From NCBI GenBank assembly GCA_977017575.1, contig CDRNVI010000149.1, forward strand, positions 1 through 64,000: a DNA stretch of 64,000 nucleotides. The letters run 5' to 3'. Positions 1 to 51,711 of the stretch are shown here, one piece after another. How positions within the stretch are numbered: position 1 is the stretch's first letter; each line of letters begins with the position of its first letter. The stretch comes from Paramoeba atlantica (taxonomy: Eukaryota > Protista > Discosea). The translations under genes were made by a program, and so were the position numbers. The notes beneath the pieces are model-generated. The model was given only the letters and a program-made list of their open reading frames with translations. It did not search any database and had not been told where the DNA came from.

Positions 1-491
1 AAGCAGGTCTCACCCCAACAGACTAAACTGAACAACCTCCTCAAATATGATTGGAGTTATCCCATTCCCTCTGCCTCATTCTTGAGGAAATTTCAAGGAT
101 TAGTAATTACAAACTCAAGTGGTATACTTCCCCAAACCTTTCTCTCCTGATGGAACCTTGATACCACCTGTAGTCCTCTCTAAAGATCTTCATGATGTAT
201 ATTCTACTTCAATTCCAAGTGACAAGTTATGTGAAAGTATGTTGAATAATGAAAAGAATAGAAAGAAAAGGAAAAAAAAGAAAAAAAGACATATAATCTT
301 TAAAGAAGGTAGACTTTCTCCAAGTGATGATAAAGATTAACAAACTATACTAATATTTAACTGATTTAAATATAATTAACTATGCTTATATTACCAATTG
401 GTAAGACCTAAATTAACTTTTCCATCTATATGATGGTTTTTTATCTTAATAAATTAATGGCATCTTCTGATGTCTAGTAAAAAAAAAAAAA
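1..491 (+). mobile_element. 3' end of decayed L1-like LINE (C-terminal ORF2 extension, 3'UTR, poly(A))
   Basis: ORF 119..340 is nearly identical to ORF 3344..3565 and similar to the C-terminal tail of ORF 23732..24850; ends in an A-run at 479-491. Confidence 0.85.
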
Positions 492-629
492 GTTCTTCTT
501 CTTGCTTTTCTGTTTCCTTGTTGTTGTTTTCTTGTTCTGTTAGTGTTGGCTGGGGATCCTTCCCATAAAGGTTTTGATCCAGAGTTTCTATTTCTCTTTC
601 TTTTCTCTTGTTTTCTCTGTTGATCCTGC

Positions 630-1265
630 TCCTCTCCTCATAAGCTTAAAGCAGGCCAAGTAACCCATACAAGGGATTAACTAGATGTTGATCATTCTTA
701 CTCTCACTGCAAAAGGCTTTCCTCAATTCTTAATGGCCTTACTTACTCCTTGCATCTTTTCACATACTTTAAGCTAATCCCTCTTTGAGTCCATTTTACA
801 GCTTATTCGCATACCCAAATAGGTTGTTTCATCACTTCTAAAGTTGATTTTGAGCATTGCAGACTAAGGGTCAGAAGGTTTGTACATTTGAGTTGTTAAA
901 ACAAAGCACTTTGAGTAATTCAAGAGAGCACCAGTTGTCTTCTCATACTTCTGGAAAGTGGGGGTCAAGAGGTTAATAGTATCAACTTTTTTCAAAAGTA
1001 GTTCAAGGTCATCCATGAAGCTAGAGAGCTTCTTAAGAGGGTGATTCTTGTTAAGGCTCACCAGCAATAAATCAAAGACAATTAGAAAGAGAAGAGGGGA
1101 AATTGGGCAGCTTTGTTAAACTCCAGTTTTACTGGTAATAGAGTCAGCTGAAAAGGAGGTGAGGAATGTTCTCAACCTTGGGAATCAAACATAATTGGCT
1201 CTCTCTAAAGGAGTCAGGAAATTTCATACTTTCTCCTGCTTGTTGGATCAATTCAACCCACATCT
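630..1265 (-). pseudogene. L1-like reverse transcriptase fragments
   Basis: ORF 864..1067 contains SSFMDDL and YEKTTGALLNYSKC; adjacent decayed TGV(R)Q(G)CPISPLLF; matches ORF 25082..27709. Confidence 0.85.
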
Positions 1266-1693
1266 CTTTTTTTTTTTTTTCTTTTGGAGATAGACTTTAT
1301 TCAATTAGTAGTTCTTAATCTAAGCCATTTAAATTACATTAAATTATGTTTGTTTTTAACCTCTAACAAGAGGTGAAGTTTTAAACTTCAGCTTAGTTCA
1401 GTTAGTCTTTATGCTGAACTTTAGAACTTCTGCAAGTTCAGGCTGAAAAATGTACATCAAAAGGGAAAATAATCCAAAGCTCCTTCCAAGGGAGTTTATT
1501 CTCAACTTTTTAGCAGACAGGGCTGAGATGTAACCTGTTCTGATTTTCACACTTCTTCAAAAGCTCCTCACTCCAATCAAATCACTCTTTTGCACCAGAA
1601 AAATTTTCTATAATATTGAAAAACTGAGATTTGAACTTGCCCCCCAGGGTTGGACAGAGTCAAATTTATAACTAAACTATGGGCACCAACTCC
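1266..1693 (-). mobile_element. tRNA-derived SINE family 2
   Basis: Reverse strand has an A-box-like TAGTTTAG and a B-box AAGTTCAAATC (CpG-decayed GTTCGAATC); poly(A) tail; 11-bp TSD aacccacatct at 1255-1265 and 1694-1704; homologous to 8001, 29639 and 31358 copies. Confidence 0.8.
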
Positions 1694-3193
1694 AACCCAC
1701 ATCTTTTGATATTTCTTATAAGTTTTTCAATAGAGGGAGAAGGGAATTCCATCAGGGCCTGCACTGGTATTGTTGGCTTGAAGGAACAGCTTCTCAACTT
1801 TCAGAAGATCTACTGTATGATTTTCAGAGTCTGGGAAGTGGAAGAGGTGGTTATCAAGAAGTTCATCCAGGGCTTTGAGGTTATAAGGGCATTCAGTTCC
1901 CAGGAGATCACCCTAAAAACCTTTAATAGCATCTCTCACAGTAGATGAGTCATGAAAACAAGATGCCATCAACAATCACTCCTCTCACCTTGGGGGAGGA
2001 CTTCTTGTTGGAACAAGCTGGGTGGTTGTTTTCTTTTTAACATTGGACTTTATTAGATGATGGTCTAACTCAAAGCCACTAATTTTTTAAGGTTAAAGAT
2101 AACAAGGATAGAGTTTCACCTCTTTAGGTTCAAATGGTTCAAAGACCTTTAATTCACTTAAACTCCTTCTTAAGGAATTTATTCTCTGCTTTTTAGCAAA
2201 CAGGGCAGAGGATAATCTGTTCTGTTTTTCACATTCAAGTGAGCAGGAAGAGAAAATAATGTTTTTAATATTTTCCTCTTTGGGATTTGAACCTACAACC
2301 CTGAATTGAAGCAATAGCTGTTTTACCAACTAAACCATCATGCTACAATTAGCTGAGTGGTTGTTGAGAAAGACTTCAAGTTGTTGTTCAAGACTTGATA
2401 TCCAAGAGAGACCAACTTTAATCATCTGAGGAATAATCTTTAATCTCCATTTCTGCTCTTTTGGAAGATTATCCCAATTCTCAGCAGCTGCTTCTCTCAG
2501 TTCAGCTTCCAGGGAGGTGAAGGAATGAGCTGGGCTATCCTTTCTAAGGATTCAAGTTGTTCTCAGCTTCTTAACTAAAGTCTGCAATTTCCAAAGTTTC
2601 TTGAAGAGATGAGCTTCCTTGTGCTTGTTCTTCCACAGAGCAGTCAATCTCCAGGCTTTAGATTTCATTTTATCAAGACAGGTCACAGTGTCACCCACAG
2701 AGTAGTTTCCAACAGCTTCAGAGAGAGTAGAGATAAATTTGAGGTCATTAATTAGGTATTCAGAAATCCTCTTCTTCTGAGAGTTGATCTCTCACTCTTG
2801 GCTCCTCCAATCATTACAACATGATCTTTGAATCCAGATGGGATTGCATTCACAAACAAACAGTCTTCAGGAGCCTCAGAGGGGAGGAAAATGTGGTCAA
2901 TACATCAACCCTGAAAATGGGTAGGTTCCAACCAGTTGAGGCAAGACAGATTCAGTTCAGAGAGGTGTTCAATTAATTTCTGGCAATTGGTTTCATTCAA
3001 ATCCCAATTGAGGTCCCCAGCCAGAATATTTCTGCTCTGGGGGAAGAAAAACCAGGAAGATTCTTCCATTAGGTGTTTTAGTTTCAGACCAGGGTGGTGA
3101 TAAACATTGAGGGCTGAAAATTCCTGATTTTGGATGGAAACTTTTAATCCAAACAATCCACCTTTATTTTTCTCAAAAAAGAAGGAAGTGGGA
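1694..3193 (-). pseudogene. Decayed L1 ORF2 endonuclease/linker region, interrupted by a SINE1
   Basis: ORF 2905..3207 (ALNVYHH, ILAGDLNWDLN, EPTHFQG) matches the APE domain of ORF 25082..27709. Confidence 0.85.
2031..2350 (-). mobile_element. tRNA-derived SINE family 1
   Basis: A-box TGGTTTAGTTGG, B-box GGTTCAAATCCC, tail aataaagtcc...aaaaagaaaa; TSD agctg(g/a)gtggttgtt at 2016-2030 and 2351-2365. Confidence 0.85.
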
Positions 3194-5017
3194 TTTTTTT
3201 TTTCCACTAGATATCAGAAGATGCCATTAATTTATTAAGATAAAAAACCATCATATAGATGGAAAAGTTAGTTTAGGTCTTACCAATTGGTAACATAAGC
3301 ATAGTTAATTTTATTTAAATCAGTTAAATATTAGCATAGTTTGTTAATCTTTATCATTACTTGGAGAAAGTCTACCTTCTTTATAGATTATATGTCTTCT
3401 TTTCTTTCTTTTTCTTTTCTTTCTATTCTTTTCATTATTCAACATACTTTCACATAACTTGTCACTTGGAATTGAAGTAGAATATACATCATGAAGATCT
3501 TTAGAGAGGGCTACAGGTGTTATCAAGGTTCCATCAGGAGAGAGAGGTTTGAGGAAGTATACCATTTAAGTTGTAATTACTAATTCTTGAAATTTCCTCA
3601 AGAATGAGGCAGAGGAAATGGAATAACTCCAATCATGTTTGAGGGGGTTGTTCAGTTTAGTCCATAAGAGAAAGTTATCAACAATCCATTCTTCTTCAGT
3701 TTTTCCAACTTGTTTAGCATGAAGGTCCTATTTGGAATTATTAACAGCAGCCATTCCATCCATAACTGACCAACTAGCAGCAGTAGCAATAGCATCAACA
3801 TGTTTGTTAAGTTCACAGAAAACATGGATAAATTCAGCATCTTCAAATTTAGCAGCAGTTGCTCTAATCTCTATCAACAGGAGGTTAAGTTCATGGTTGC
3901 TAATATTGTGATTCTTAGGAGCTGCCTTGGTTAATATCATACAATCACCAACAATTTGGATGTGGGAACCCAAACTTCTTGCATTCTTTAATCCCAGGAG
4001 ACAGCCTTTGAATTCACCAACATTATTTGTACTAAAGGGAATAGTTTCAGCACCAGCCAGGATTTCCTTTCCATTTCTGAAGATAGCATACCCAGCACCA
4101 CCAAGATGAGGATCAGTAGGGCCTGAACCATCATAGAAAACTTGTAAGCCTTTAAACTTAAACTTTTCAATCTCTCTCTTCTTTTTTGCAGAGGTTGGGT
4201 CTTTACAAGGAGGTTTGGAAAGGAGTTTGTTCTTCTTTAAGACTTTGTGAAAGATATCAATAGTATACTCAGCAGATTGGGATCCTTCAGCACACACAGT
4301 TATCCACAGTGCAAGTAAGGCATCACTCACTATTGAGGTGAAGAGGTTTGAACAGTATTGAGCAGTAAGTCCACACACAAAGGAAGAGGATTCCCAAGAT
4401 GGGAGTTTCAACTTGATGCAGCTATGTCCCATCTTCTCAAGATAACTTTTTGCATGAATCCAGGTTTCAAGGAGGTGGGTTCAAAATTTTTTCCCTTTCT
4501 TACATAATCAACAGGTAGGAGGTTCCAAAGTAAAGTGGGAGATCTTATCCATTGTAGAAAGACTACAAATCAAGAATTTGGTAAGGTTTTGTTGGAGTTG
4601 AGGTTTAAGAGTATGAGCTAAGTTGTAGACAATGCATTTGATCTTTCCACCCTCTTGGTAGATATCTTCAAGCACAATAGGTACTTGACAAGAAAGGGAA
4701 CTATAGTTTGTTTTGGTTGAACCCCCCAGAATCACTTCTTTAGAGATTTTTGAAGCAGCAAAGGAAGCATCAAGTCTCATAGCTCCAATGGTCAAGGGAT
4801 TCTTGTATTCACAACTTAGAGGTTTATAAGAGATAAGAAGAGCCCAATTGAAAAGAATGAAGTGGCGAACCTGACATTTACTACCCATAAGAGGATGGCA
4901 AGTAGTTAAAATGGTGGTTTTCAGATTGACATATGCTCCCAAGGCAGCTAGAATGAGTTTCCATACTATCACAGATACAGATTGGGGGATAAGCTTAAAG
5001 TGAGCTAAGTAGCCCAA
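3194..5017 (-). mobile_element. 3' portion of L1-like LINE (RT tail, CCHC region, RNase H, 3'UTR, poly(A))
   Basis: ORF 3728..4432 has VFYDGSG...NNVGEF...VGDC...NKHVDAIA (RNase H); ORF 4508..5017 matches the RT C-terminus; T-run at 3194-3203. Confidence 0.9.
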
Positions 5018-5022
5018 TCCTT

Positions 5023-6724
5023 CAATCTGTATCTGTGATAGTATGGAAACTCATTTGAGCTGCCTTGGGAGCATATGCCAATCTAAAAACCACCATTCTA
5101 ACTGCTTGCCATCCTCTTATAGGTAGTAAATGTCAGGTTCACCACTTTATCCTCTTCAATTGGGTTCTTCTTATCTCTTATAAACCTCTAAGTTGTGAAT
5201 ACAAGAATCCCTTGACCATTGGAGCTATGAGACTTGATGCTTCCTTTGCTGCTTCAAAAATCTCTAAAGAAGTGATTTTGGGAGGTCCAACCAAAACAAA
5301 CTATAGTTCCCTTTCTTGTTAAGTACCTATTGTGCTTGAAGATATCTACCAAGAGGGTGGAAAGATCAAATGCATTGTTTACAACTTAGCTCATACTCTT
5401 AAACCTCAGCTCCAATAGAACCTTTCTTTTTAACACTAGACTTTATTAGGTGATGGCCTAACCCAAAGCCACTAATTTTTTAAGGTAACTCTAATGGAAC
5501 CTTACCAAATTCTTGATTCATGGTCTCTCTACAATGGATAAGATTTCTCACTTTACTTTGGAACCTTCTACCTGTTGATTATATAAGAAAGAAAAAGAAT
5601 CTTGAACCTACCTCCTTGAAACTTATATTCATACTAAAAGTTACCTTGAGAAGATGGGATAAAGCTGTATAAAGTTGAAACTTCCATCTTGGGAATCTTC
5701 TACCTCTGTGTGTGGACTTACTGCTTAATACTGCTCAAACCTCTTCACCTCAATAGTGAGTGCTGCCTTACTTGCACTGTGGATAATTATATGTGCTGAA
5801 CAGTCCCAATCAGCTGAATATACTATTGATATCTTCCACAAAGTTTTAAAGAAGAACAAGCTCCTTCTGAAACCTCCTCATAAAGATCTAACCTCCACAA
5901 AGAAGAAGAGAGAGATTGAAAAGTTCAAGTTTTAAAGACTTACAAGTTTTCTATGATGGCTCAAGCTGTACTGATTCTCACCTTAGTGGTGCTGGCTATA
6001 CTATTTAAAAATGAAAAGGAAATCTTGGCTGGTGTTAAAACTATTCCCTTTGGTACAAATAACATTGGTGAATTCAAAGGCTATCTCTTGGGATTAAAGA
6101 GTGCAAAAGGTTTGGGTTCCCACATCCAAATTGTTGGTGATTGTATAATATTAACTAAGGCAGCTCCTAAGAATCACAATATTAGTAACCATAAACTTAA
6201 CCTCTTGTTGATTGAGATTAGAGCAACTGCTGCTAGGTTTGAAAATACTGAATTTATCCATGTTTTTTGTAAACTTAACAAATGTATTTACTATTGCTAC
6301 AACTTCTAGTTGGTCAGTTATAGATGGAATAGCTGCTGTTAATGATCTCAAATGGAACCTTCATACTAAACAAATTGGAAAAACTAAAGAAGAATGGATT
6401 GTTAACAACTCTTTCTTATGGATTAAACTGAACAACCTTCTTGAGCATGATTGGAGTTATTCCATTCCTTCTTCCTCACTTTTGAGAAAATTTCAAGGTT
6501 TAGTGATTACAACTCAAGTGATATACTTTTCTAAACCTCTAACCTTTAAAGAAGGTCAACTTCCTTCAAGTGATGATAAAGATTAATTAACTATTCTAAT
6601 AATTAACTGATTTAAATGTAATTAATTATATCTATATTACCAATTGGTAAGACCTAAACTCAAAATGATGGTTTTTTATTTTAATAAATTAATGGCATCT
6701 TTTGATATCTAGTAAAAAAAAAAA
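5023..6724 (+). mobile_element. Mirror-image copy of the L1 3' portion at 3194-4984
   Basis: ORFs 5065, 5953 and 6212 parallel ORFs 4508, 3728 and 3344; A-run at 6714-6724; a SINE1 tail fragment is inserted at ~5423-5486. Confidence 0.9.
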
Positions 6725-6729
6725 CCTAA

Positions 6730-7122
6730 GTGTCCTTCTAAATGCATTTTCACTAGGAATACTTCTCAACCATGCAATAGATGTAGTAAGAAATAGAACC
6801 AAAGGAATTTCCAAGAATCATTTTGTATGTTGATAATACCCAAGTTAGCAGGACAATCTGAGGCAATAATCATATTCTAAATATTTTAAACAGATTCACA
6901 AAATTTCACAGATTCTATGCAACAAAAAGAGTTTTGACCATTCTTACTGTAAACAAAACTGTTGAATTATGTTTGTACTTTCAGCTGCCCAGTGAAGATT
7001 ATTTCAGATCAAGGATGTGAATTTGATGCAAAACTGACCACTAAGTTTGGAAAAATGATGGGAGTGAATTTGAAATATACAATTAATTTCAATCCAAGAG
7101 CAAATGAAGTGGTTGAAAGACC
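6730..7122 (+). pseudogene. Decayed DDE (rve-type) integrase core fragment
   Basis: Hand translation across one frameshift: ILNRFTKF...LPVKIISDQGCEF...KYTINFNPRANEVVER; upstream PCNRCSK resembles the end of the HHCC finger. Confidence 0.75.
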
Positions 7123-7180
7123 TTGAAGAACAAGTTTGCTATGGTAAAAGACCACCCTACAGGGAGTTGAGCATATTTAT

Positions 7181-7503
7181 AATTGTGATATGATGGCTTA
7201 GTTGGTAAAACAGCTATTACTTCAATTTGGGGTTGCAGGTTCAAATCCCAAAAAAGAAAATATTAAAAATATTATATTCTCTTCCTGCTCACTTGAATGT
7301 GAAAAATAGAACAGATTATCCTTTGCTCTGTTTGCTAAAAAGCAGAGAATAAATTCCCTAAGAAGGAGTTGAAGTGAATTAAAGATCTTTGAACCATTTG
7401 AATCTAAAGAGGTGAAACTCTATCCTTATTATCTTTAACCTTAAAAAATTAGTGGCTTTGGGTTAGACTATCATTTAATAAAGTCTAGTGTTAAAAAGAA
7501 AAA
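7181..7503 (+). mobile_element. tRNA-derived SINE family 1
   Basis: A-box TGGCTTAGTTGG, B-box GGTTCAAATCCC, A-rich tail; degenerate TSD gag(t/c)tgagcatat(t/c)ta. Confidence 0.85.
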
Positions 7504-8000
7504 GAGCTGAGCATATCTACTGATAGTTCTTAGCTAACTTTATTCAATTATATTCTTCAGAAGCTCTGACTTGTCTTTCAACAGAGTTGCTGAAGGAAAT
7601 GCTAATTCAATACCATTATTTTTGAAAAAAGCAGTTCCAGGTATGAACCAAACAATTGCTAAGCTTTGGAAGATGATTGATATGAAGAATGCCTCCCTCT
7701 CCACCCACCTTGCTACCAAACTTAACCCATCTCTCATTAAAGGAGCCAAAATACTCTTTCCAGTAAGAGCCTTTACCTTTCCTAACAAGATTCCTACCTT
7801 TCCCAACTTCCTGAAAGCTATTGAAAGTCAAACCAACCTTAAGGGAAGTATTAAAGTGGAGGCAAGGGCCAAGCACTATGCTATTCTTGCTCATAAGGAG
7901 GAAGACATTCTTATAATCCAATCTATTATTAAAAAGAAAGAAAATCTAATTGCCAACTGACTTGAAAGTACTTGTATTATCTGTAGAGTCAATCATGATG

Positions 8001-8314
8001 AAGGTTGGTGTTTATAGTTTAGTCATAAATTTGATTATATCCAACCAAATTATATTTCAGCCTTGTTTGCTAAAAAGTTGAGAATAAAATCCCTTGAAAG
8101 GAGCTTTGAATTATTCTCCCTTCTAATATCCTTCAACTTGAACTTACAAAAGTTCTAAAGTTCAACATAAAAACTAATTGAACTAAGCTAAAGTTTAAAA
8201 CTTCACTTCTTGTTAAAGGTTAAAAACAAATATAATTTAATGTAATTCAAATGGCTTAGATTAAGAACTACTAATTGAATAAAGTCTGCTTCAAAAAGAA
8301 AAAAAAAAAAAAAA
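8001..8314 (+). mobile_element. tRNA-derived SINE family 2, internally deleted
   Basis: Head and 3' half match 31358-31780; poly(A); TSD agtcaatcatgatg / agttaatcataata. Confidence 0.8.
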
Positions 8315-8689
8315 AGTTAATCATAATACTTATTTGTAGGGAATCAAGATTAAACTCCCTTTCCAAGTCTCAGAAAACAAGTGGATTTACAATTTATTTA
8401 ATAGAGAGAATTACCTTCCCTCTTTCAATCTCAAAGAAGTGATATAAGTTTCTGAAGACTGCATCATCATTTTCTACAAGTCTATTTCTCTTTTTCTAGT
8501 CCACCTTATTACCAAGACCAAAGGATTTATCTGAATCAATATCTTGATTAAAGCCAAGTATTCCATTTGGATATTAATCAAACCATATTACCTCCTTATT
8601 GAATGTCTTCTTTGTGGGGTGAACCATTCTGTAAGTTTAACTTGCACTGCAGAGATTATCCAGAAACAAGGAGAAGATACTATCAGCAA

Positions 8690-9009
8690 TTGTAACATGA
8701 TGGCTTAGTTGGTAAAACAACTATTACTTCAATTCAGGGTTGCAGGTTTTAATTCCAAAGAGGAAAATATTAAAAACATTATTTTCTCTTCCTACTCACT
8801 TGAATGTGAAAAACAAAACAGGTTATTCTCTGCCCTGTTTGCTAAAAAGCAGAGAATAAATTCCCTGAGAAGGAGTTTAAATAAATTAAAGATCTTTGGA
8901 CCATTTGAACCTAAAGAGGTGATACTCTATCTTTATTATCTTTAACTTTAAAAAATTCATAACTTTGGGTTCAGCCATTACCTAATAAAGTCTAGTGTTA
9001 AAAAGAAAA
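8690..9009 (+). mobile_element. tRNA-derived SINE family 1
   Basis: A and B boxes, tail; TSD gatactatcagcaa (8676-8689) / gatatcattagcaa (9010-9023). Confidence 0.85.
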
Positions 9010-9476: not shown

Positions 9477-9590
9477 TTGTGGTATGATGGCTTAGTTGGT
9501 AAAACAGCTATTGCTTCAATTTGAGGTTGCAGGTTCAAATCCCAAAGAGGAAAATATTAAAAACAAAAAAAAAAAAAAATAGGGGGTTCA
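9477..9590 (+). mobile_element. SINE family 1, 5' head fragment
   Basis: tgtggtatgatggcttagttgg...ggttcaaatccc, then truncated. Confidence 0.8.
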
Positions 9591-40400: not shown

Positions 40401-43400
40401 TTCATTTCCAAACAAGTTACAAATAAAATTGAATATTTTACTCAATTTTACAATTTATTTGATTTATTTACAAAAAAAAAAACATATTTCCCTTTGTTTT
40501 TGATTATTTCCCAATCACTTTTTTCAATGTATAATTCAATATTTGTATTATTTTCATTTTTTCTCAATTGTTATTTAGTTTTTGATGTTTAAAAGTTCAT
40601 TTCCAGACAAGTTACAAATAAAATTGTACTTTTTACACAATTTTACAATCTATTTGACTTATTTACAAAAAAAAAAACATATTTCCCTTTATTTTTGATC
40701 ATTTCCCAACCACTTTTTTCAATGTCTATTTGTATTATTTTCATTTTTAGAAAATTGTTATTCAGTTTTTGATGTTTAAAAGTTCATTTCCAAACAAGTT
40801 ACAAATAAAATTGAATATTTTACTCAATTTTACAATTTATTTGATTTATTTACAAAAAAAAAAACATATTTCCCTTTGTTTTTGATTATTTCCCAATCAC
40901 TTTTTTCAATGTATAATTCAATATTTGTATTATTTTCATTTTTTCTCAATTGTTATTTAGTTTTTGATGTTTAAAAGTTCATTTCCAGACAAGTTACAAA
41001 TAAAATTGTACTTTTTACACAATTTTACAATCTATTTGACTTATTTACAAAAAAAAAAACATATTTCCCTTTATTTTTGATCATTTCCCAACCACTTTTT
41101 TCAATGTCTATTTGTATTATTTTCATTTTTAGAAAATTGTTATTCAGTTTTTGATGTTTAAAAGTTCATTTCCAAACAAGTTACAAATAAAATTGAATAT
41201 TTTACTCAATTTTACAATTTATTTGATTTATTTACAAAAAAAAAAACATATTTCCCTTTGTTTTTGATTATTTCCCAATCACTTTTTTCAATGTATAATT
41301 CAATATTTGTATTATTTTCATTTTTTCTCAATTGTTATTTAGTTTTTGATGTTTAAAAGTTCATTTCCAGACAAGTTACAAATAAAATTGTACTTTTTAC
41401 ACAATTTTACAATCTATTTGACTTATTTACAAAAAAAAAAACATATTTCCCTTTATTTTTGATCATTTCCCAACCACTTTTTTCAATGTCTATTTGTATT
41501 ATTTTCATTTTTAGAAAATTGTTATTCAGTTTTTGATGTTTAAAAGTTCATTTCCAAACAAGTTACAAATAAAATTGAATATTTTACTCAATTTTACAAT
41601 TTATTTGATTTATTTACAAAAAAAAAAACATATTTCCCTTTGTTTTTGATTATTTCCCAATCACTTTTTTCAATGTATAATTCAATATTTGTATTATTTT
41701 CATTTTTTCTCAATTGTTATTTAGTTTTTGATGTTTAAAAGTTCATTTCCAGACAAGTTACAAATAAAATTGTACTTTTTACACAATTTTACAATCTATT
41801 TGACTTATTTACAAAAAAAAAAACATATTTCCCTTTATTTTTGATCATTTCCCAACCACTTTTTTCAATGTCTATTTGTATTATTTTCATTTTTAGAAAA
41901 TTGTTATTCAGTTTTTGATGTTTAAAAGTTCATTTCCAAACAAGTTACAAATAAAATTGAATATTTTACTCAATTTTACAATTTATTTGATTTATTTACA
42001 AAAAAAAAAACATATTTCCCTTTGTTTTTGATTATTTCCCAATCACTTTTTTCAATGTATAATTCAATATTTGTATTATTTTCATTTTTTCTCAATTGTT
42101 ATTTAGTTTTTGATGTTTAAAAGTTCATTTCCAGACAAGTTACAAATAAAATTGTACTTTTTACACAATTTTACAATCTATTTGACTTATTTACAAAAAA
42201 AAAAACATATTTCCCTTTATTTTTGATCATTTCCCAACCACTTTTTTCAATGTCTATTTGTATTATTTTCATTTTTAGAAAATTGTTATTCAGTTTTTGA
42301 TGTTTAAAAGTTCATTTCCAAACAAGTTACAAATAAAATTGAATATTTTACTCAATTTTACAATTTATTTGATTTATTTACAAAAAAAAAAACATATTTC
42401 CCTTTGTTTTTGATTATTTCCCAATCACTTTTTTCAATGTATAATTCAATATTTGTATTATTTTCATTTTTTCTCAATTGTTATTTAGTTTTTGATGTTT
42501 AAAAGTTCATTTCCAGACAAGTTACAAATAAAATTGTACTTTTTACACAATTTTACAATCTATTTGACTTATTTACAAAAAAAAAAACATATTTCCCTTT
42601 ATTTTTGATCATTTCCCAACCACTTTTTTCAATGTCTATTTGTATTATTTTCATTTTTAGAAAATTGTTATTCAGTTTTTGATGTTTAAAAGTTCATTTC
42701 CAAACAAGTTACAAATAAAATTGAATATTTTACTCAATTTTACAATTTATTTGATTTATTTACAAAAAAAAAAACATATTTCCCTTTGTTTTTGATTATT
42801 TCCCAATCACTTTTTTCAATGTATAATTCAATATTTGTATTATTTTCATTTTTTCTCAATTGTTATTTAGTTTTTGATGTTTAAAAGTTCATTTCCAGAC
42901 AAGTTACAAATAAAATTGTACTTTTTACACAATTTTACAATCTATTTGACTTATTTACAAAAAAAAAAACATATTTCCCTTTATTTTTGATCATTTCCCA
43001 ACCACTTTTTTCAATGTCTATTTGTATTATTTTCATTTTTAGAAAATTGTTATTCAGTTTTTGATGTTTAAAAGTTCATTTCCAAACAAGTTACAAATAA
43101 AATTGAATATTTTACTCAATTTTACAATTTATTTGATTTATTTACAAAAAAAAAAACATATTTCCCTTTGTTTTTGATTATTTCCCAATCACTTTTTTCA
43201 ATGTATAATTCAATATTTGTATTATTTTCATTTTTTCTCAATTGTTATTTAGTTTTTGATGTTTAAAAGTTCATTTCCAGACAAGTTACAAATAAAATTG
43301 TACTTTTTACACAATTTTACAATCTATTTGACTTATTTACAAAAAAAAAAACATATTTCCCTTTATTTTTGATCATTTCCCAACCACTTTTTTCAATGTC

Positions 43401-45820
43401 TATTTGTATTATTTTCATTTTTAGAAAATTGTTATTCAGTTTTTGATGTTTAAAAGTTCATTTCCAAACAAGTTACAAATAAAATTGAATATTTTACTCA
43501 ATTTTACAATTTATTTGATTTATTTACAAAAAAAAAAACATATTTCCCTTTGTTTTTGATTATTTCCCAATCACTTTTTTCAATGTATAATTCAATATTT
43601 GTATTATTTTCATTTTTTCTCAATTGTTATTTAGTTTTTGATGTTTAAAAGTTCATTTCCAGACAAGTTACAAATAAAATTGTACTTTTTACACAATTTT
43701 ACAATCTATTTGACTTATTTACAAAAAAAAAAACATATTTCCCTTTATTTTTGATCATTTCCCAACCACTTTTTTCAATGTCTATTTGTATTATTTTCAT
43801 TTTTAGAAAATTGTTATTCAGTTTTTGATGTTTAAAAGTTCATTTCCAAACAAGTTACAAATAAAATTGAATATTTTACTCAATTTTACAATTTATTTGA
43901 TTTATTTACAAAAAAAAAAACATATTTCCCTTTGTTTTTGATTATTTCCCAATCACTTTTTTCAATGTATAATTCAATATTTGTATTATTTTCATTTTTT
44001 CTCAATTGTTATTTAGTTTTTGATGTTTAAAAGTTCATTTCCAGACAAGTTACAAATAAAATTGTACTTTTTACACAATTTTACAATCTATTTGACTTAT
44101 TTACAAAAAAAAAAACATATTTCCCTTTATTTTTGATCATTTCCCAACCACTTTTTTCAATGTCTATTTGTATTATTTTCATTTTTAGAAAATTGTTATT
44201 CAGTTTTTGATGTTTAAAAGTTCATTTCCAAACAAGTTACAAATAAAATTGAATATTTTACTCAATTTTACAATTTATTTGATTTATTTACAAAAAAAAA
44301 AACATATTTCCCTTTGTTTTTGATTATTTCCCAATCACTTTTTTCAATGTATAATTCAATATTTGTATTATTTTCATTTTTTCTCAATTGTTATTTAGTT
44401 TTTGATGTTTAAAAGTTCATTTCCAGACAAGTTACAAATAAAATTGTACTTTTTACACAATTTTACAATCTATTTGACTTATTTACAAAAAAAAAAACAT
44501 ATTTCCCTTTATTTTTGATCATTTCCCAACCACTTTTTTCAATGTCTATTTGTATTATTTTCATTTTTAGAAAATTGTTATTCAGTTTTTGATGTTTAAA
44601 AGTTCATTTCCAAACAAGTTACAAATAAAATTGAATATTTTACTCAATTTTACAATTTATTTGATTTATTTACAAAAAAAAAAACATATTTCCCTTTGTT
44701 TTTGATTATTTCCCAATCACTTTTTTCAATGTATAATTCAATATTTGTATTATTTTCATTTTTTCTCAATTGTTATTTAGTTTTTGATGTTTAAAAGTTC
44801 ATTTCCAGACAAGTTACAAATAAAATTGTACTTTTTACACAATTTTACAATCTATTTGACTTATTTACAAAAAAAAAAACATATTTCCCTTTATTTTTGA
44901 TCATTTCCCAACCACTTTTTTCAATGTCTATTTGTATTATTTTCATTTTTAGAAAATTGTTATTCAGTTTTTGATGTTTAAAAGTTCATTTCCAAACAAG
45001 TTACAAATAAAATTGAATATTTTACTCAATTTTACAATTTATTTGATTTATTTACAAAAAAAAAAACATATTTCCCTTTGTTTTTGATTATTTCCCAATC
45101 ACTTTTTTCAATGTATAATTCAATATTTGTATTATTTTCATTTTTTCTCAATTGTTATTTAGTTTTTGATGTTTAAAAGTTCATTTCCAGACAAGTTACA
45201 AATAAAATTGTACTTTTTACACAATTTTACAATCTATTTGACTTATTTACAAAAAAAAAAACATATTTCCCTTTATTTTTGATCATTTCCCAACCACTTT
45301 TTTCAATGTCTATTTGTATTATTTTCATTTTTAGAAAATTGTTATTCAGTTTTTGATGTTTAAAAGTTCATTTCCAAACAAGTTACAAATAAAATTGAAT
45401 ATTTTACTCAATTTTACAATTTATTTGATTTATTTACAAAAAAAAAAACATATTTCCCTTTGTTTTTGATTATTTCCCAATCACTTTTTTCAATGTATAA
45501 TTCAATATTTGTATTATTTTCATTTTTTCTCAATTGTTATTTAGTTTTTGATGTTTAAAAGTTCATTTCCAGACAAGTTACAAATAAAATTGTACTTTTT
45601 ACACAATTTTACAATCTATTTGACTTATTTACAAAAAAAAAAACATATTTCCCTTTATTTTTGATCATTTCCCAACCACTTTTTTCAATGTCTATTTGTA
45701 TTATTTTCATTTTTAGAAAATTGTTATTCAGTTTTTGATGTTTAAAAGTTCATTTCCAAACAAGTTACAAATAAAATTGAATATTTTACTCAATTTTACA
45801 ATTTATTTGATTTATTTATA
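37446..45820. repeat. Satellite array: 22 x 382 bp, each unit a 195+187 bp dimer
   Basis: Marker gattatttcccaatc recurs at 37446, 37828, 38210, 38592 ... 45468 (period 382); paralogous marker gatcatttcccaacc lies 195 bp into each unit; very AT-rich; no CpG seen. Confidence 0.97.
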
Positions 45821-45985
45821 AAAAAAAACTAAAAAACTGAAAAACTGAAAATTTGAAAAACTGAAAAATTGAAAAATTGAAAAATTGAAAAATTGAAAAA
45901 TTAAACAATTGGAAAATTGGAAAATTGGAAAATTGGAAAATTGGAAAATTGGAAAATTGGAAAATTGGAAAATTGGAAAATTAAA
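45820..45985. repeat. 8-bp minisatellite grading from aaaaactg to aaaaattg to gaaaattg
   Basis: Read directly from the sequence. Confidence 0.9.
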
Positions 45986-46271
45986 AGAATTGAACTTGAG
46001 ACTTCAAAAATGAGAAATTGAAGAAAAGAACAACTAAACTATCATACTCATCTTTAAAAAAACAAAAAAATAAGAAAGTTAATGAGATTAATTTAAATTT
46101 TTTTTTATTTTTTCTTTTTTAACATCATTTCTTTTGTATTAATCTTTTATATTTCTTCTTCAAAATAAAATCTAAAATTAATATCTTTTTCACTACTTTT
46201 CAAATTAAAAACTTCTCAAAATATTATTTTATCATATAAAAGAGTTTTTTATTCAAACTTTAAATCTTAAT

Positions 46272-46488
46272 TAAGTTTAAAAAAATATTCAAATATGAAA
46301 TATTATAAATATATATAACATCTTTATTTAAATTCTTGTTGAATTCAATTCAATTGATTAAAGTTTATTATCATTAATATCCTTATTACTACATTTTCTT
46401 TTCTTCACTTTTTCACTTTTTGATTTCCCCAGTTTTCAATTATACTTCTTTAAACTATTGAAACCTTAGAAGTAAAACAAAATCTACC
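46272..46488 (+). repeat. 5' LTR (heavily mutated; left edge uncertain)
   Basis: Aligns to 51504-51711; followed by PBS-like tggtgatgcttcaatttgaa. Confidence 0.85.
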
Positions 46489-46489
46489 T

Positions 46490-46509
46490 TGGTGATGCTT
46501 CAATTTGAA
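46490..46509 (+). promoter_or_regulatory. Putative primer-binding site
   Basis: Starts with TGG immediately after the 5' LTR; cognate tRNA not identified. Confidence 0.55.
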
Positions 46510-49500
46510 TAACCAATAGAAGAAGCATTTGATCTTGAGAAATTGCTTAGAGGAAACTCCAAGCAGAACAATTGGTGAAGGCAATTCATTTCCTGGTTGT
46601 GCAAAATGAAGAGTTGGTGTGAATAAAGAAGGAGTTTTTAAAGATGAAAGAACCAAACTACAAATCTTAGAAACAACATTGGAAATTGATAATTAAAGAT
46701 GTGAATTTCCAAAACCCAGTCCAAGTCTCTCAATTTTGCATCTAAAAAAAGAGTATTGAACAAGATATTTGACCAAACATACTTGAGTTCAGAAAACAAA
46801 TCAAGTTTGCAAGGGCAATTGAAACTCATTAGGCCAAAAGTTGGATGGATTACCTTTGAATTTGTTGTATACCCTTAATAGATTCTTTGGTGAGAAAGTT
46901 GTCCTTATGGAACAGCAGAAGTTTGATCTTTTTTGAGTACCTGATAAAAAAGTTACTAATCAAGAATTTCAGGTGGTAACTATAGAATATCTGCACCTGT
47001 TCTTGAAGATAAGAGAAACTCCCTTTCAGGAAACCTATGTGAAGGAAGCAATGTAAGAATTCAAAAATCCAATCTTCCAAGGTCTAAATAAAGTGTTTGT
47101 TAGGGGGGGAACAGATGAGTATTAAAGAACCAAAGAAAAATTGAAGAGGAGTGAACCAATAACCTGTTTTCTTTCATCCCTGGATGAGCACTGTGGATAA
47201 ATATGGTGATGCTGCAGCAAGGAAATATAAACATATGAGTCTTGTTAATTGGAACAAAAGAGTTCCAGGAAAGAGAGGATGTGGGGATTTCAGTTGGAAA
47301 ATACTTTACTTGTGAACTCCTTGGATGTGGGATATTAACTCTTGAAGAACTTAAAGAAAAAGCAAATGGTTTGTCAATTCTTTTAAGAGTAAAAAGGAAT
47401 TTACTCAAAATACTTGGCAACAAGACAAGATGGTGGTTAAGATGAGTGAAAATGGCTTCACAATCCATATTAGCAACCTAGTAAGAGACTTGAATCCTAA
47501 AATATACCAAATAAATGATAAACTGTTCAACATACCTTGCATGGTCAATGATATTTACTACACAAGCACTTTGTGATTCTAGGGCTTGCAGGATAGATGT
47601 TGTGGCAAGAACATTCCTGAATAAAGCAATTCCCAAACTTTGGAGACCATTACAAAGGAAATCAAAGGAAATTACATTTCCTTAGCTGACAAATCATCAA
47701 TAATGCCAACTGACTCCTTCCCAATCCTAGAGAGATTGGAGAATTAAAAATAACTACACAAACAAGATTGGATCCTAGATCAATCTTAGCAATTGAGGTC
47801 AGACAGAAAAAAAAAGTTCTACAACTGAGATTTGATCATGTGAGACAATATATCTACACTACCTGAATTGAGATTATGAATGTTGGAAATACCTCATTCT
47901 CACTTGAAAAAGGGTCTACATGTTGTAAAACACATTAATGTTACAGAAAAGGATGCAGAACAAACCATTGCAAAACCTCTTGATAAAAGACCAGTAAAAC
48001 TTCACCAAAGGAAGTCAGATGAAAGAATGTAGAAAGATAAATTGGTCACTCCAGAACTACAGCCTCAAGAGGACTGCCATGGAATGGCAAAACACATGTG
48101 CAATCAAGGAGGTTGGGGATTCTCAGAAGAAACAGCATCAATGTTCTTTAGCAAATATCCTATTGAGAGATGGTCAGAAAAATCTGGAAGAAGATGAAAA
48201 GATGATTCCAGAGGAATATGAGGAGTTCACAAAGAAAACTGACCTCACTCTTAGTGATCTCAATCTTGATCAAATGATTCAACTCTGTAAACTCTTTGAA
48301 AAATACAAAGAAATGTGGGACATACTTAGCAATGCTCCAATCATGCATACAGATGCAACAGAGTTCAAAATTGAACTTAAAAATGAAACTCAAGAGCCTT
48401 TTAGATGAGCTTATTATACAAAGGAGACAGTTAAAAGGACAATTGAAGAGAATCAAATCCAAGAGATGGCCAAGAGAAGAGTCATCCAATCATCAAATTC
48501 ACCATGTGAGTGGCAAAAAAGCAAATGAAAAAGTCTGATTCTATGTGGATTACAGAGAATTAAATGAAAGAACTAAGAAATGGAGTTATCCAATACCAAA
48601 AAAATTAATGATATGTTGTCATACCTGGGTGAATCCTCATTCTTTTCAACATTGGATATGACTGCAGCATTTTAGTCAATCCCAATCCAAGAGGAGGACA
48701 AGGGAAAAATGGCTTTTGTTCACAATTCAGACTGTGGGAATGGAATTCAATGCCATTTGGATTAACAAATGCTCTGGCAACACAGCAACATTTTATAGAT
48801 ACAATACTTGCTGGCTTGCAATAATATATATCTGTATTAATTATATTGATGACATAGTTATCTTCTCAAAAACCTTTGAGAAACATATTCAATCATTAGT
48901 AGAGAAAGTGCTGGATAGATTAAAGGAAAATAAGTTGCAAATTAACCTGAGTAAAGTGGTGAAAGATCTTTCACATTACTTGGATATACAGCAACAAAGG
49001 ATGGAATTTTGGCTAATGACAAGAAAGTCAAGGCCATAAAACATTTTCCACAACCAACCAATCAAAAGGAATTACAATCACTCTTAGGATTGGTTAGTTG
49101 GTGTAGGAGATTCATCCACAATTGTTCTCAAAAAACATACCACCTTCGAGAATTACTGCTACAACCATTATTTGAATGGGTTAAGGAGGCAGATAATGAA
49201 TTTCAGGAAATGAAGGAAACAATTGCAAGAATACCAATGCCAAATTTCAGAAAAACATTCTATATTCATGTGGACACATCAAAAAATGGTTATGATTCAA
49301 TACTGACACAACACCCTGATGATCCTCTTGATAAACCAGCACCAAAAAGGTCAGGAATACCAAAAAAGCACAAAATAGTCGCTTTCACAAGTCTGGCTTT
49401 GCCAAAACACAATAAAAATATACAAATTCTGAACAAGAATGTTATGAGGCTTACTGGGCAATTAACAAGTTTAAGGAATTCATTATGGGAAGAGATGTGG

Positions 49501-51490
49501 TGATTTTTAGTGAGCACCAGAGTCAACAGTCAAACTGTGCAACTCCACAGTAAGCAAACAAGAAGCAAACTTATCTGTGGGTGGCTGCTGGAAATAGCAG
49601 CAGTTGCAAGTCAAATTCTACACCAACCTGGGAAAACACTGGTTATTCTTGATACACTCAGTTGAGCACATCATGTATTCTATCAAGAGGAAGATGCTCA
49701 AACTCCAATTAAGAAGTCCTGGAGAGACTGGGAGTTAAAAATGTGGAAAACAAAACAACATTTTAACAAACAAAAAATGGCAATATTGAAGCTCTGTTCT
49801 CTCTCAAAAACCTGTCATAGGGTAGATGAGTCCACCAGAGATGGAAAGGAGTTATTGGCTAAAATGGGTCAGTGCACAGAAAGCATGGGTCAGCTTGGTG
49901 GCCAATCTGCTCAAGGAAGGAGCAGGGGACTCTCTCAAGGATGACTATCTGGGATAGCTGTTGGGTCAGCTTCATGTAAGACACTGGGCAGTGTGATGGG
50001 TTAGCTTCAGACAATTCCCAGCAAGACTGAGTGTAATGACATTTCTGACTCTGGAAGTGAGGATGAATTTAGGTCAAGTACACAACCAGGTGAACCTACC
50101 AGAGTTCATACAGTGCCTGAAATACAACCTCTTATAAATAAGGAGCCAGAAGGAGCAAAACTGTCAGATACTGGTGCTGGCCACACTGGATCTGAGAATC
50201 AGAATGATTCAGAAAAACAATGGATCATAAAGGACCAAGAACAATACTGGAGCAATATGAAGGATCAATTTTGTCAAAGAATGAGAAATTTGATCTTAAT
50301 TAGAGAATACCTGAGTTTTGTAAAGACATTCAGAAATTATTGGAAACAAGATGACATTATTGTCTCAATAATACATATACCCATATCTTATCAATTGTGG
50401 ATGCCTTCACAGGGTACTTTTCATTATTTCTGCTGAAAGCTGTCATCACAAAAGAGATGGCACAATGCCTCTTGAAATATGTTACAATCCATTCAATGCC
50501 ACCGGAAATAGTGACTGATGGAGGGGCCCAGAAAGAACTCTTTGTGGAATTGACACAAATCTGGGGAACACACCATGCAAAGGTCTCCCTCTATAACCAC
50601 AAAGGAAATGGCAAAGTGGGAACAATTCATTCACCTGTTAAAAACATGATGAGGGCTTTATGTCCAGAAATATCAAAGGGACTGTGGGATTTGCTCCTTC
50701 CAATTGGTGGAATTTGCTTACAATACCCAAGTTCATTCTGTAACAAAACAAAAACCTTTCATGTTACAATTTGGTCGAATACCAACATATCCAATCAATG
50801 TTACACTGGGAACATCAAACCCAAAATTGGTTACTTCAGATGAATATGTGGCTAATGTGAGGGATAAGATGTTAGAAATCTTTCAACTGGTAAATGAAAA
50901 ATGAAGAGATTCCAAAGAACAAAGAGTTGATGACTATAATGCTCATCAAAGAACTCAAATTCTATCAGTTGGAGACTGAGTCCTTCTTCTAAATCATGAA
51001 AAAAGGAAGAAATTTAACCAAAAATTCAATCCAAGGACACAAGGTGATGTCCATATGATAACTGAGGTTGTTTCAGCTCAAATATATCGATTAAGGAATC
51101 TCAAAACAAGATGGATTCTTCCACAACCTGTTCATGGAAGTGAATTAATATGAAAGGGTTGAGATTGAAAAGGAACAAAACCTGATAAAGGAGAAAGAAC
51201 TCCCACCAGAAGATGGATGAAGAAGTCTGAGCTATAGAATTATCTCAGAAAGAGAATTTGATGGTTATCAACAATATTGTATGGAAATCCAACCACCTAC
51301 TGGAAGAAAATGACATGAGTGGTGGGAGAAAGAACACCTGGGAGGTACAAAAGAGTTGAAAGATTACCTCAAGGCAAAGAAGCCTCAAAAAGGTTATTGG
51401 TGGGCAGACTGATCAATAATGGGTGGATTTTCCCTGTAAGAACTTTGAATTTTGTTCAGAACTGACAAAGCTGCATTCAAAACTCTGCTT

Positions 51491-51503
51491 GCAAGGGGGG
51501 GGG
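51491..51503 (+). promoter_or_regulatory. Polypurine tract
   Basis: gcaaggggggggg directly before the TG of the 3' LTR. Confidence 0.85.
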
Positions 51504-51711
51504 TGTAAATAATTAAATATCCAAATATGGAATATTATAAATATGTATAACACCTTTATTTGAATCCTTGTTGAATTCAGTTCAACTGATTGCAGTTCAT
51601 TGTTGTCAACATCCTGTCACTGTGTTCTCTCCTCTCTACTCTCTCACTTGTTGATTTCCCAGTTTCTCAACTGTGCTTCTTTGAAACCTCAGAAATAAAA
51701 CAAAATCTACA
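51504..51711 (+). repeat. 3' LTR (208 bp, TGTA...TACA)
   Basis: TG...CA termini, preceded by the PPT, aligns to the 5' LTR. Confidence 0.92.

What the first reader, a model, noticed from the sequence alone, without database searches (positions are those of the whole stretch)
1..51711. Pervasive C>T/G>A hypermutation of repeats in CpG and non-CpG contexts (RIP-like genome defence?)
Seen: pairs that were identical at insertion differ almost only by C>T or G>A, often outside CpG. The TSDs gatactatcagcaa (8676) and gatatcattagcaa (9010) both derive from gatgccatcagcaa, still present in the empty copy at 14907. Other TSD pairs show the same: aacttccaacttagaa vs aacttttaatttagaa (31342/31781), caagagttaact vs caagagctagct (29627/30082), gggaagggacatctct vs gggaaaggacacctct (32204/32542). 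Motifs decay by G>A: RT FMDDL>FIDNL, protease DSG>DSR, RNase H GDC>RDC. CpG is nearly absent from old copies but common in the young L1. Established: fungal RIP gives C>T in repeats (CpA-biased in Neurospora), and 5mC deamination alone gives mainly CpG loss. Inference: a broad-context cytosine-mutating defence, or all-context methylation, acts here. This would be notable if the host lies outside the fungi where RIP is known.
Basis: partly seen in the sequence, partly recalled or inferred. Interest (0 to 1): 0.85.

Follow-up and report, generated by a model that had tools for sequence, protein, structure and literature searches.

The report
Cytosine-to-thymine hypermutation of protist repeats
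The repeats in this protist DNA have been worn down almost only by C-to-T changes, fastest at CpG but also at every other cytosine and unevenly between neighbouring regions and copies, which points to a cytosine-directed silencing or mutating process rather than ordinary background mutation.

Summary
All TSD strings sit at the stated coordinates. CpG o/e is about 0 over 1-52 kb.

- **Young L1 family (9 copies):** private substitutions polarised by majority are 226 C>T/G>A, 33 T>C/A>G and 12 transversions. Of the C>T changes, 160 lie outside CpG.
- **Character of the process:** it is strand-symmetric, has no non-CpG context preference and shows no strand-coordinated runs. CpG cytosines mutate about 6-17 times faster than other cytosines.
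- **Known models that fail:** RIP indices do not fit Neurospora-type RIP. APOBEC-type cDNA editing is excluded.
- **Locus 45-60 kb:** two further versions were recovered (L009, L010).
  - In the old TE relic all three lineages keep accumulating C>T.
  - In the adjacent non-repeat flank the window and L009 show a balanced, slow spectrum (11 non-CpG C>T against 11 other changes).
  - In the same flank L010 gained 117 C>T against 5 other changes.
- **Consequence:** the C>T excess is specific to domains and copies, not a uniform mutation bias.

My best reading (0.5) is heterochromatin- or methylation-coupled deamination, with near-complete CpG methylation plus low-level all-context methylation. 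The published analogue is the CX methylation of Naegleria. A homology-triggered RIP-like deaminase (0.17) and a general bias (0.2) remain open.

The host was not identified with the tools. No methylase gene and no reads could be examined. Other first readers noted similar signs elsewhere in this genome.

The parts
1..52000 (.). Repeat-dense CpG desert (nested retroelements, short repeat families, satellite) that carries the C>T decay
   Evidence: CpG o/e is 0.00-0.08 outside the young L1, with TpG/CpA excess. 55-100% of each kb in 1-46 kb is repeated.
23563..27710 (-). Young 5'-truncated L1-type LINE copy (APE + RT + RNase H), used for the polarised spectrum
   Evidence: Pfam RVT_1, Exo_endo_phos and RVT_3. 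It is 96-98% identical to 8 copies in L002-L008. The window copy has 31 private C>T, 1 T>C and 0 transversions. 59 of its 98 ancestral CpGs are lost.
28861..28875 (-). Decayed RT motif (FIDNL) in an older L1 relic
   Evidence: Six-frame motif search.
2029..2351 (+). Family A short repeat (about 322 bp). Other full copies are at 7180-7502(-), 8688-9009(-), 19259-19580(-) and 32221-32541(+).
   Evidence: Singletons: 34 non-CpG C>T, 4 T>C, 8 transversions.
1267..1690 (+). Family B short repeat (about 425 bp). Other copies are at 29653-30078(+) and 31360-31782(-), plus three in L002, L003 and L007.
   Evidence: Singletons: 48 C>T (3 CpG-like), 4 T>C, 8 transversions.
8676..9023 (.). Family A insertion with its two TSDs (8676-8689 and 9010-9023). 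The empty paralogous site is at 14907-14920.
   Evidence: Exact strings found (sequence). The partners differ at 3 C/T positions, with C in the empty site.
19636..22578 (+). 2.9-kb segment duplicated in inverted orientation at 33803-36747
   Evidence: 89.5% identity. 297 transitions against 7 transversions, both copies hit equally, only 21 TG/CA doublets.
33218..37348 (+). LTR-element-like unit with about 600-bp terminal direct repeats (33218-33816 and 36748-37348)
   Evidence: The direct repeat pair is 88% identical and differs by 63 transitions and 5 transversions.
37436..45828 (.). 382-bp (2 x about 190 bp) satellite: 22 units, GC 19.6%, no CpG
   Evidence: TRF and composition. There are only 3 singleton variants among 21 units.
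46000..52000 (.). Old LTR-retroelement relic (RT YIDDI at 48842-48856) that is still accumulating C>T in all three recovered versions
   Evidence: Three-way alignment with L009 and L010. Window 33 C>T, 6 T>C, 3 tv. L009 23, 8, 0. L010 branch 86, 22, 5.
52000..60156 (.). Non-repeated, low-complexity flank with CpG retained (o/e 0.31). It is spared in the window and L009 lineages and hypermutated in L010.
   Evidence: Window 14 C>T (7 at CpG), 5 T>C, 0 tv. L009 5, 4, 2. L010 117 C>T (87 non-CpG), 4, 1.

Best explanation
The pericentromere-like repeat domain of this genome is kept in a silenced state in which cytosines are chemically vulnerable.

**Proposed mechanism (inferred)**
- CpG sites are methylated almost fully.
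- All other cytosines are methylated at a low level without sequence preference.
- Deamination of 5mC, or of cytosine in that chromatin, then converts C to T on both strands.

**What this produces**
- New insertions lose CpG within a short time.
- They then lose other cytosines about 6-17 times more slowly.
- Old copies end up AT-rich and free of CpG.

**How the process is bounded**
The process follows domain boundaries rather than repeat identity. It stops near 52 kb in the window and L009 lineages. It has spread across the neighbouring 8 kb in the L010 version.

**Shown versus inferred**
- Shown: the direction, context, strand symmetry, and regional and lineage specificity of the mutations.
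- Inferred: that 5mC is the chemical cause, and that the purpose is silencing.
For: **CpG as the main target**
- CpG o/e is about 0 with TpG/CpA excess over 1-52 kb.
- 98 ancestral L1 CpGs are 9-80% lost per copy.
- 81 of 115 shared variable L1 sites lie in CpG context, which indicates recurrent independent hits.

**Non-CpG C>T**
- The rate is 1.1-1.5% per site in young L1, against T>C 0.19% and C>A 0.02%.
- CHG and CHH rates are about equal.
- On the L1 sense strand there are 116 C>T and 110 G>A.
- In L010 the non-CpG rate is 3.6-4.0% in CpA, CpC and CpT alike. The trinucleotide chi-square gives p = 0.58. The runs test gives z = -0.03.

**Domain effect**
- In the TE relic 46-52 kb all three lineages accumulate C>T.
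- In the flank 52-60 kb only L010 does: 117 C>T to 5 other changes, against 19 to 11 in the other two lineages (Fisher p = 7e-6).
- Counting non-CpG C>T against T>C plus transversions, the window plus L009 lineages give 55 to 17 in the TE relic and 11 to 11 in the flank (p = 0.03).
- L1 decay is inversely related to flank CpG o/e (rho -0.83, p = 0.006).

**Precedent**
Naegleria gruberi methylates all four dinucleotide contexts equally on repeats and heterochromatin, with DNMT1 orthologues only (PMC12344493).
Against: - No methylation data and no DNMT gene from this genome were seen. Among the earlier notes returned by my look-ups, none names a C5 methylase or a deaminase.
- If the host is a kinetoplastid, as earlier notes guess, that lineage is reported to lack DNA 5mC (PMC7463849, listed).
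- The ratio of CpG to non-CpG rates differs between loci: about 17 times in L1 and about 6.5 times in L010. This hints at two separable processes.
- The 'flank' exists in three versions, so it is not proven to be single-copy.
- Even the spared flank has 28 transitions to 2 transversions between the window and L009. Part of the transition bias is therefore general.
Confidence: 0.5

Rival explanations
1. A homology-triggered, RIP-like genome defence. Duplicated DNA is recognised and its cytosines are deaminated by a methyltransferase-like or deaminase enzyme. There is no dinucleotide preference beyond CpG, and mutation leaks into flanking DNA.
For: - Both arms of the 2.9-kb inverted duplicate are hit equally, with 297 transitions against 7 transversions.
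- The LTR-like pair differs by 63 transitions and 5 transversions.
- L010 may be a paralogous duplicate of the whole 15-19 kb locus held in the same assembly as L009. It is mutated along its whole length, including formerly spared DNA, at 117 C>T to 5 other changes.
- The C>T to T>C per-site ratio of about 44 in L010 is at hypermutation level.
Against: - There is no context preference outside CpG (p = 0.58).
- There are no strand-coordinated runs.
- (CpA+TpG)/(ApC+GpT) is 1.1-1.8.
- The partner lineages of L010 show 4 or fewer stem C>T changes in the flank, so only one version was hit.
- A TE relic with no similar copy in the sampled DNA keeps mutating.
- The young L1 has many copies of at least 96% identity, yet it has no more non-CpG C>T (about 1.3%) than the relic gained since the window-L009 split (1.1-1.6%).
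Confidence: 0.17
2. A general, genome-wide mutation bias. Examples are weak uracil or T:G repair, or strongly transition-prone replication. This is combined with ordinary CpG methylation of repeats. Repeats look hypermutated only because they are unconstrained.
For: - Transitions dominate even in the spared flank: 28 transitions to 2 transversions between the window and L009.
- The non-CpG C>T is context-free and strand-symmetric, as spontaneous deamination would be.
- The genome is AT-rich, with the window at 32% GC.
Against: - The spectrum, and not only the rate, differs between compartments and lineages on the same DNA: 11 to 11 against 87 to 5, p = 3e-6.
- Selection on the flank cannot convert a 17-to-1 spectrum into a 1-to-1 spectrum.
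- The implied equilibrium GC of about 10-13%, computed, is far below every part of the window. The flank is 34% GC and keeps CpG o/e at 0.3-0.9.
- L1 copies are heterogeneous in the ratio of C>T to other changes (chi-square p = 2.6e-5).
Confidence: 0.2
3. APOBEC/AID-like editing of retroelement cDNA during retrotransposition.
For: The elements concerned are mostly retroelements, and there is a slight excess at TpC (1.2-1.5 times).
Against: - C>T and G>A on the L1 sense strand are equal, 116 against 110.
- TSDs, a non-repeat flank and old resident relics are mutated after insertion.
- There are no clusters or strand-coordinated runs.
Confidence: 0.03
4. Assembly or base-calling artefact, in which modified or damaged cytosines are read as T in some contigs.
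For: - L002-L010 come from one ENA assembly of unknown read type.
- No reads could be laid.
Against: - The same spectrum is seen among paralogous copies inside the window itself.
- It has evolutionary consequences: CpG desert, decayed motifs, and stops.
- It is graded with element age.
Confidence: 0.03

Closest known systems
Repeat-induced point mutation (RIP) of Neurospora crassa and other ascomycetes (RID/DIM-2 dependent)
   Same: Repeats are mutated almost exclusively by C:G to T:A transitions. Both arms of a duplication are hit. The result is AT-rich relics with stops, and mutation can extend into adjacent DNA.
   Different: - There is no CpA (or other non-CpG) preference here.
- The second RIP index is not met.
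- There are no strand-coordinated runs.
- CpG is the preferred site.
- Old low-identity relics keep mutating.
- The host is apparently not a fungus, although this is unverified.
RIP-like CpG-targeted hypermutation of TEs in basidiomycetes (Microbotryum, Puccinia; PMC3318451, PMC5381629)
   Same: C-to-T hypermutation of TEs with CpG as the favoured target.
   Different: Those patterns are confined to (T)CpG. Here 160 of 226 private L1 C>T changes and 168 of 203 L010 changes lie outside CpG, in all contexts alike.
All-context (CX) 5mC on repeats and heterochromatin in Naegleria gruberi by DNMT1 orthologues (PMC12344493)
   Same: Cytosine modification of repeats is without dinucleotide preference, is confined to heterochromatic domains, and occurs in a protist outside plants, animals and fungi.
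   Different: - Naegleria shows no CpG preference and low overall 5mC. Its mutational consequence has not been described.
- Here CpG is hit 6-17 times harder.
- Only the mutational footprint is seen here, not the mark.
5mC-deamination decay of methylated TEs in vertebrates and plants
   Same: CpG loss with TpG/CpA gain. Young insertions retain CpG and old ones do not. In plants, CHG and CHH methylation adds non-CpG C>T.
   Different: - CHG is not favoured over CHH here (1.5% against 1.3%, and 4.2% against 3.7%).
- The transition-to-transversion ratio of 13-49 and the C>T to T>C per-site ratio of up to 44 are, to my knowledge, far more extreme than in those genomes.

Membership tests
Canonical fungal RIP | C:G>T:A transitions concentrated in duplicated DNA | tested here: met
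   931 transitions to 73 transversions in 11 repeat pairs. 226 C>T against 45 other private changes in L1 copies.
Canonical fungal RIP | Strong dinucleotide preference (CpA in Neurospora) and RIP indices TpA/ApT > 0.89 with (CpA+TpG)/(ApC+GpT) < 1.03 | tested here: not met
   Non-CpG rates are alike for CpA, CpC and CpT: 1.1-1.5% in L1 and 3.6-4.0% in L010 (chi-square p = 0.58). The second index is 1.1-1.8 in every 2-kb bin.
Canonical fungal RIP | Dependence on sequence duplication or identity | tested here: inconclusive
   The relic at 46-52 kb has no similar copy in about 180 kb of sample, yet it keeps mutating. The locus does exist in 3 versions whose status as haplotype or paralogue is unknown.
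Canonical fungal RIP | RID (DNMT4-type) or DIM-2 gene in a fungal host, acting premeiotically | not testable with these tools
The host was not identified.
CpG-only 5mC deamination decay (vertebrate type) | CpG hypermutability with TpG/CpA excess | tested here: met
   CpG o/e is about 0. 9-80% of ancestral L1 CpGs are lost. The CpG rate is 6.5-17 times the non-CpG rate.
CpG-only 5mC deamination decay (vertebrate type) | The excess of C>T is confined to CpG | tested here: not met
   The non-CpG C>T per-site rate is 6.6 times T>C in L1, 22 times in families A and B, and 44 times in the L010 flank.
All-context cytosine methylation of heterochromatin (plant or Naegleria type) | Footprint in all sequence contexts, on both strands, bounded by chromatin domain rather than element | tested here: met
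All-context cytosine methylation of heterochromatin (plant or Naegleria type) | 5mC demonstrably present in CpG and non-CpG contexts, and a DNA C5-methyltransferase encoded | not testable with these tools
There is no methylation-aware data and no access to the proteome.
APOBEC/AID-type cDNA editing | Strand-asymmetric G>A on the element's sense strand, a 5' context motif, and restriction to the retro-copied part | tested here: not met
   116 C>T against 110 G>A. Only a weak TpC excess. TSDs and flank are mutated.

The most novel reading that the evidence does not exclude
A protist outside the fungi has a dedicated mutagenic genome defence. Earlier notes call the host kinetoplastid-like, a lineage thought to lack DNA 5mC. 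The defence would deaminate cytosines without sequence preference across whole silenced or duplicated domains. It would be able to engulf a formerly spared 8-kb flank in one copy or haplotype (L010). In effect this is a context-free, non-fungal counterpart of RIP.
Probability: 0.2. Interest if true: 0.85.

Novelty: new variant of a known kind. Interest (0 to 1): 0.62.

Why it matters
Mutagenic silencing of repeats is firmly established only in fungi (RIP). In animals and plants it occurs as a by-product of CpG or CHG/CHH methylation.

This window shows a very clean cytosine-only decay in a protist:
- transition-to-transversion ratios of up to 49;
- a C>T to T>C per-site ratio of up to 44;
- action in every sequence context;
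- respect for domain boundaries;
- a difference between versions of the same locus.

If the cause is all-context 5mC, this would be the first mutational footprint of the Naegleria-type CX methylation, to my knowledge. It would also be evidence for heavy DNA methylation in a lineage where it is not documented. If the cause is a deaminase, it would be a new genome-defence system.

Either way the footprint defines the heterochromatic domain around a candidate centromeric satellite. It also gives a ready, testable prediction for methylome and enzyme searches.

Tried and rejected
**Reads**
- No read-level polymorphism or methylation evidence could therefore be obtained.
- Those places were masked with N in the alignments with L009 and L010 and were sent to no search tool afterwards.

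**Host identification failed**
- Rfam and tRNA scans of the window and of eight loci (L002-L009) found nothing.
- Run and organism names are coded.
- Near-identical proteins come only from the unnamed ENA assembly ERZ24900291.
- The nearest outside L1 (50% identity) lies in unassigned contigs of a Globobulimina foraminifer metagenome.
- The protein atlas gave no taxa.
- No paper cites the ERZ accession.

**Allele of the L1 region not retrieved**
- The exact look-up of the window's ORF2 found nothing.
- A homologue search with a neighbouring ORF returned only paralogues of 93% identity or less, the full-length ones near 75%.

**Other dead ends**
- The satellite is too homogeneous to give a spectrum, with 3 singletons.
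- APOBEC-type editing was rejected on strand symmetry.
- Neurospora-type RIP was rejected on context and indices.
- Selection on the flank was rejected as the sole cause because the spectrum differs, and not only the rate.
Full report
**What the window is**

The window is 64 kb of eukaryotic DNA at 32% GC.
- Positions 1-46 kb are almost entirely repeated sequence.
  - Nested LINE and LTR relics are present.
  - Two short repeat families occur: A of about 322 bp and B of about 425 bp.
  - A young, 5'-truncated L1-type LINE lies at 23563-27710(-) with APE, RT and RNase H domains.
  - A 2.9-kb segment is present twice in inverted orientation, at 19636-22578 and 33803-36747.
  - An LTR-like unit spans 33218-37348.
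  - A 382-bp dimeric satellite lies at 37436-45828, with GC 19.6%.
- Positions 46-52 kb are an old LTR-element relic.
- Positions 52-64 kb are non-repeated, low-complexity DNA.

**Check of the observation**

- The 10 differences between TSD partners are all transitions.
- FMDDL in the young L1 and FIDNL in an older relic are present.
- CpG o/e is 0.00-0.08 in the 2-kb bins of 1-54 kb outside the young L1. It is 0.15-0.27 over the young L1 and 0.2-0.9 beyond 54 kb. TpG/CpA is in excess.
- Eleven in-window repeat pairs differ by 931 transitions and 73 transversions.
- The inverted 2.9-kb pair differs by 297 transitions and 7 transversions.
  - Only 21 TG/CA doublets could conceal an ancestral CpG.
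  - Both arms are hit equally.

**Polarised spectrum in the young L1**

I fetched same-genome contigs from ENA assembly ERZ24900291 (L002-L008). They carry eight further copies of the young L1 at 96-98% identity.

The phylogeny is star-like. Shared variable sites are mostly recurrent CpG hits: 81 of 115 lie in CpG context.

Private substitutions polarised by majority were as follows:

| Class | Count |
|---|---|
| C>T/G>A | 226 |
| T>C/A>G | 33 |
| Transversions | 12 |

Per-site rates were as follows:

| Context or class | Rate per site |
|---|---|
| CpG | 0.098 (singletons only) |
| CHG | 0.015 |
| CHH | 0.013 |
| T>C | 0.0019 |
| C>A | 0.0002 |

- On the L1 sense strand C>T and G>A are equal, at 116 and 110.
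- There is no CpA preference, only a weak TpC excess.
- When recurrent hits are counted, 9-80% of the 98 ancestral CpGs are lost per copy. That is about 321 CpG events against 160 non-CpG events, so a CpG cytosine mutates about 17 times faster than another cytosine.
- In the older families A and B, non-CpG C>T is 7.0% per site against 0.31% for T>C.

CpG nevertheless remains the main target.

**What the pattern is not**

- *Neurospora-type RIP.* (CpA+TpG)/(ApC+GpT) is 1.1-1.8 everywhere. Non-CpG contexts are hit alike. Mutations on the two strands are interleaved at random (runs test z = -0.03).
- *APOBEC-like editing of cDNA.* The pattern is strand-symmetric, and it affects TSDs, old resident relics and non-element DNA.

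**Control for a general mutation bias**

A small ORF in the non-repeat flank led to two further versions of window 45.15-60.16 kb in the ENA assembly:
- L009 is 97.9% identical to the window.
- L010 is 95.6% identical to both.
- The tree is ((window, L009), L010).

It gives these polarised counts:

| Region | Window (C>T / T>C / tv) | L009 (C>T / T>C / tv) | L010 branch (C>T / T>C / tv) |
|---|---|---|---|
| TE relic 46-52 kb | 33 / 6 / 3 | 23 / 8 / 0 | 86 / 22 / 5 |
| Flank 52-60 kb | 14 (7 at CpG) / 5 / 0 | 5 / 4 / 2 | 117 (87 non-CpG) / 4 / 1 |

- In the relic the three lineages are roughly clock-like and all are C>T dominated.
- In the flank the same lineages, over the same time, behave differently.
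  - The window and L009 are slow and balanced, with 11 non-CpG C>T against 11 other changes.
  - L010 is mutated as heavily as the relic, and almost only by C>T.
- The supporting tests are:
  - flank, L010 against the other two, all C>T: Fisher p = 7e-6;
  - flank, L010 against the other two, non-CpG only: p = 3e-6;
  - window plus L009 lineages, TE relic against flank: p = 0.03.
- Selection on the flank cannot explain a change of spectrum.
- In L010 the non-CpG C>T is uniform across trinucleotides (p = 0.58). CHG (4.2%) is about equal to CHH (3.7%). The distribution is only mildly over-dispersed.
- L1 copies differ in their ratio of C>T to other changes (p = 2.6e-5).
- L1 decay correlates inversely with the CpG o/e of the DNA around each copy (rho -0.83, p = 0.006).
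- The L1 spectrum implies an equilibrium GC near 10-13%. No part of the window reaches this, so the regime cannot be uniform and long-standing.

Some transition bias is nevertheless general. Between the window and L009 the spared flank shows 28 transitions and 2 transversions.

**Mechanism**

The most economical reading is a domain-bound, cytosine-directed process coupled to silencing. This would be near-complete CpG methylation plus low-level methylation of all other cytosines, followed by deamination. The domain boundary would lie near 52 kb in two lineages and be shifted beyond 60 kb in L010.

A published precedent for context-free 5mC on repeats and heterochromatin in a protist is Naegleria gruberi, where DNMT1 orthologues methylate all four dinucleotides equally (PMC12344493).

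That 5mC is the cause here is inference. I saw neither methylation data nor an enzyme gene.

The rivals are as follows.
- *A duplication-triggered, RIP-like deaminase.* This gains weight if L010 is a paralogue. Against it: only one version was hit, there is no context preference and no strand runs, and the multi-copy young L1 is not hit harder than a lone relic.
- *A general bias plus CpG methylation.* The spectrum heterogeneity and the equilibrium argument speak against it, but only about 8 kb of control DNA of uncertain copy number was available.
- *An artefact.* This is unlikely, because the same signal is present among paralogues inside the window and has evolutionary depth.

**Host**

The host was not identified.
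- Earlier first-stage notes on this genome repeatedly call it kinetoplastid-like, with a spliced leader.
- They also mention TET/JBP-like genes, including a Naegleria-Tet1-like dioxygenase.
- These are unverified AI notes.
- None of the notes returned by my look-ups names a C5 methylase or a deaminase.
- Trypanosomatids are reported to lack DNA 5mC (PMC7463849). Diplonemids and euglenids encode DNMTs (PMC10161547, PMC12344493).
- Other first readers noted similar CpG deserts and transition-only repeat divergence on other pieces of this genome, so the phenomenon is probably genome-wide.

**Verdict**

- The 'RIP-like' label fails its defining tests.
- 'All-context methylation or a broad-context cytosine-mutating process acting on silenced domains' is supported.
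- I rate it a new variant of a known kind, of moderate to high interest.
- A methylome, the copy status of L009 and L010, and an enzyme search would settle the matter.

Noticed in passing
L009 (ERZ24900291 ctg4009l) and L010 (ctg3418l), against window 45150-60156: The satellite edge plus 15 kb of flank exists in three colinear versions, at 97.9% and 95.6% identity. They are either deep haplotypes or strains, or paralogous pericentromeric duplicates. L009 and L010 stay colinear for 19 kb, while the window departs after 60156 in low-complexity DNA.
   Followed up: partly
window 33218-37348 and 19636-22578: The first span is a 4.1-kb unit bounded by about 600-bp direct repeats (LTR-like, 88% identical). 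It lies directly against the satellite. Its internal 2.9 kb recurs inverted at 19636-22578. No protein domain was checked.
   Followed up: no
window 37436-45828: 382-bp higher-order unit made of two subrepeats of about 190 bp that are 88% alike. There are 22 copies at 99% identity, GC is 19.6% and there is no CpG. The L009 and L010 versions of the satellite edge are only 90-96% identical to the window's units.
   Followed up: partly
L001 (GCA_003358065.1, PJEL010011513.1): The nearest L1 relative outside this genome (50% identity over the full ORF2, with RNase H) lies in the unassigned contigs of a Globobulimina (foraminifer) sediment metagenome.
   Followed up: partly
window 52400-64000: Long polypurine/polypyrimidine and (AGAAAA)n-like tracts occur (52447-52600, 54579-54837, 60771-61065, 62374-63742). 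A 31-bp TTCGAA-containing tandem/palindromic block lies at 56975-57369. CpG o/e rises to 0.5-0.9 here.
   Followed up: no
They were masked in the alignments with L009 and L010 and were not sent to any search tool.
   Followed up: no
young L1 alignment (window 23563-27710 and L002-L008): The inferred ancestral L1 already has CpG o/e near 0.49 (98 CpG in 4.1 kb). The active lineage itself is therefore CpG-depleted.
   Followed up: partly
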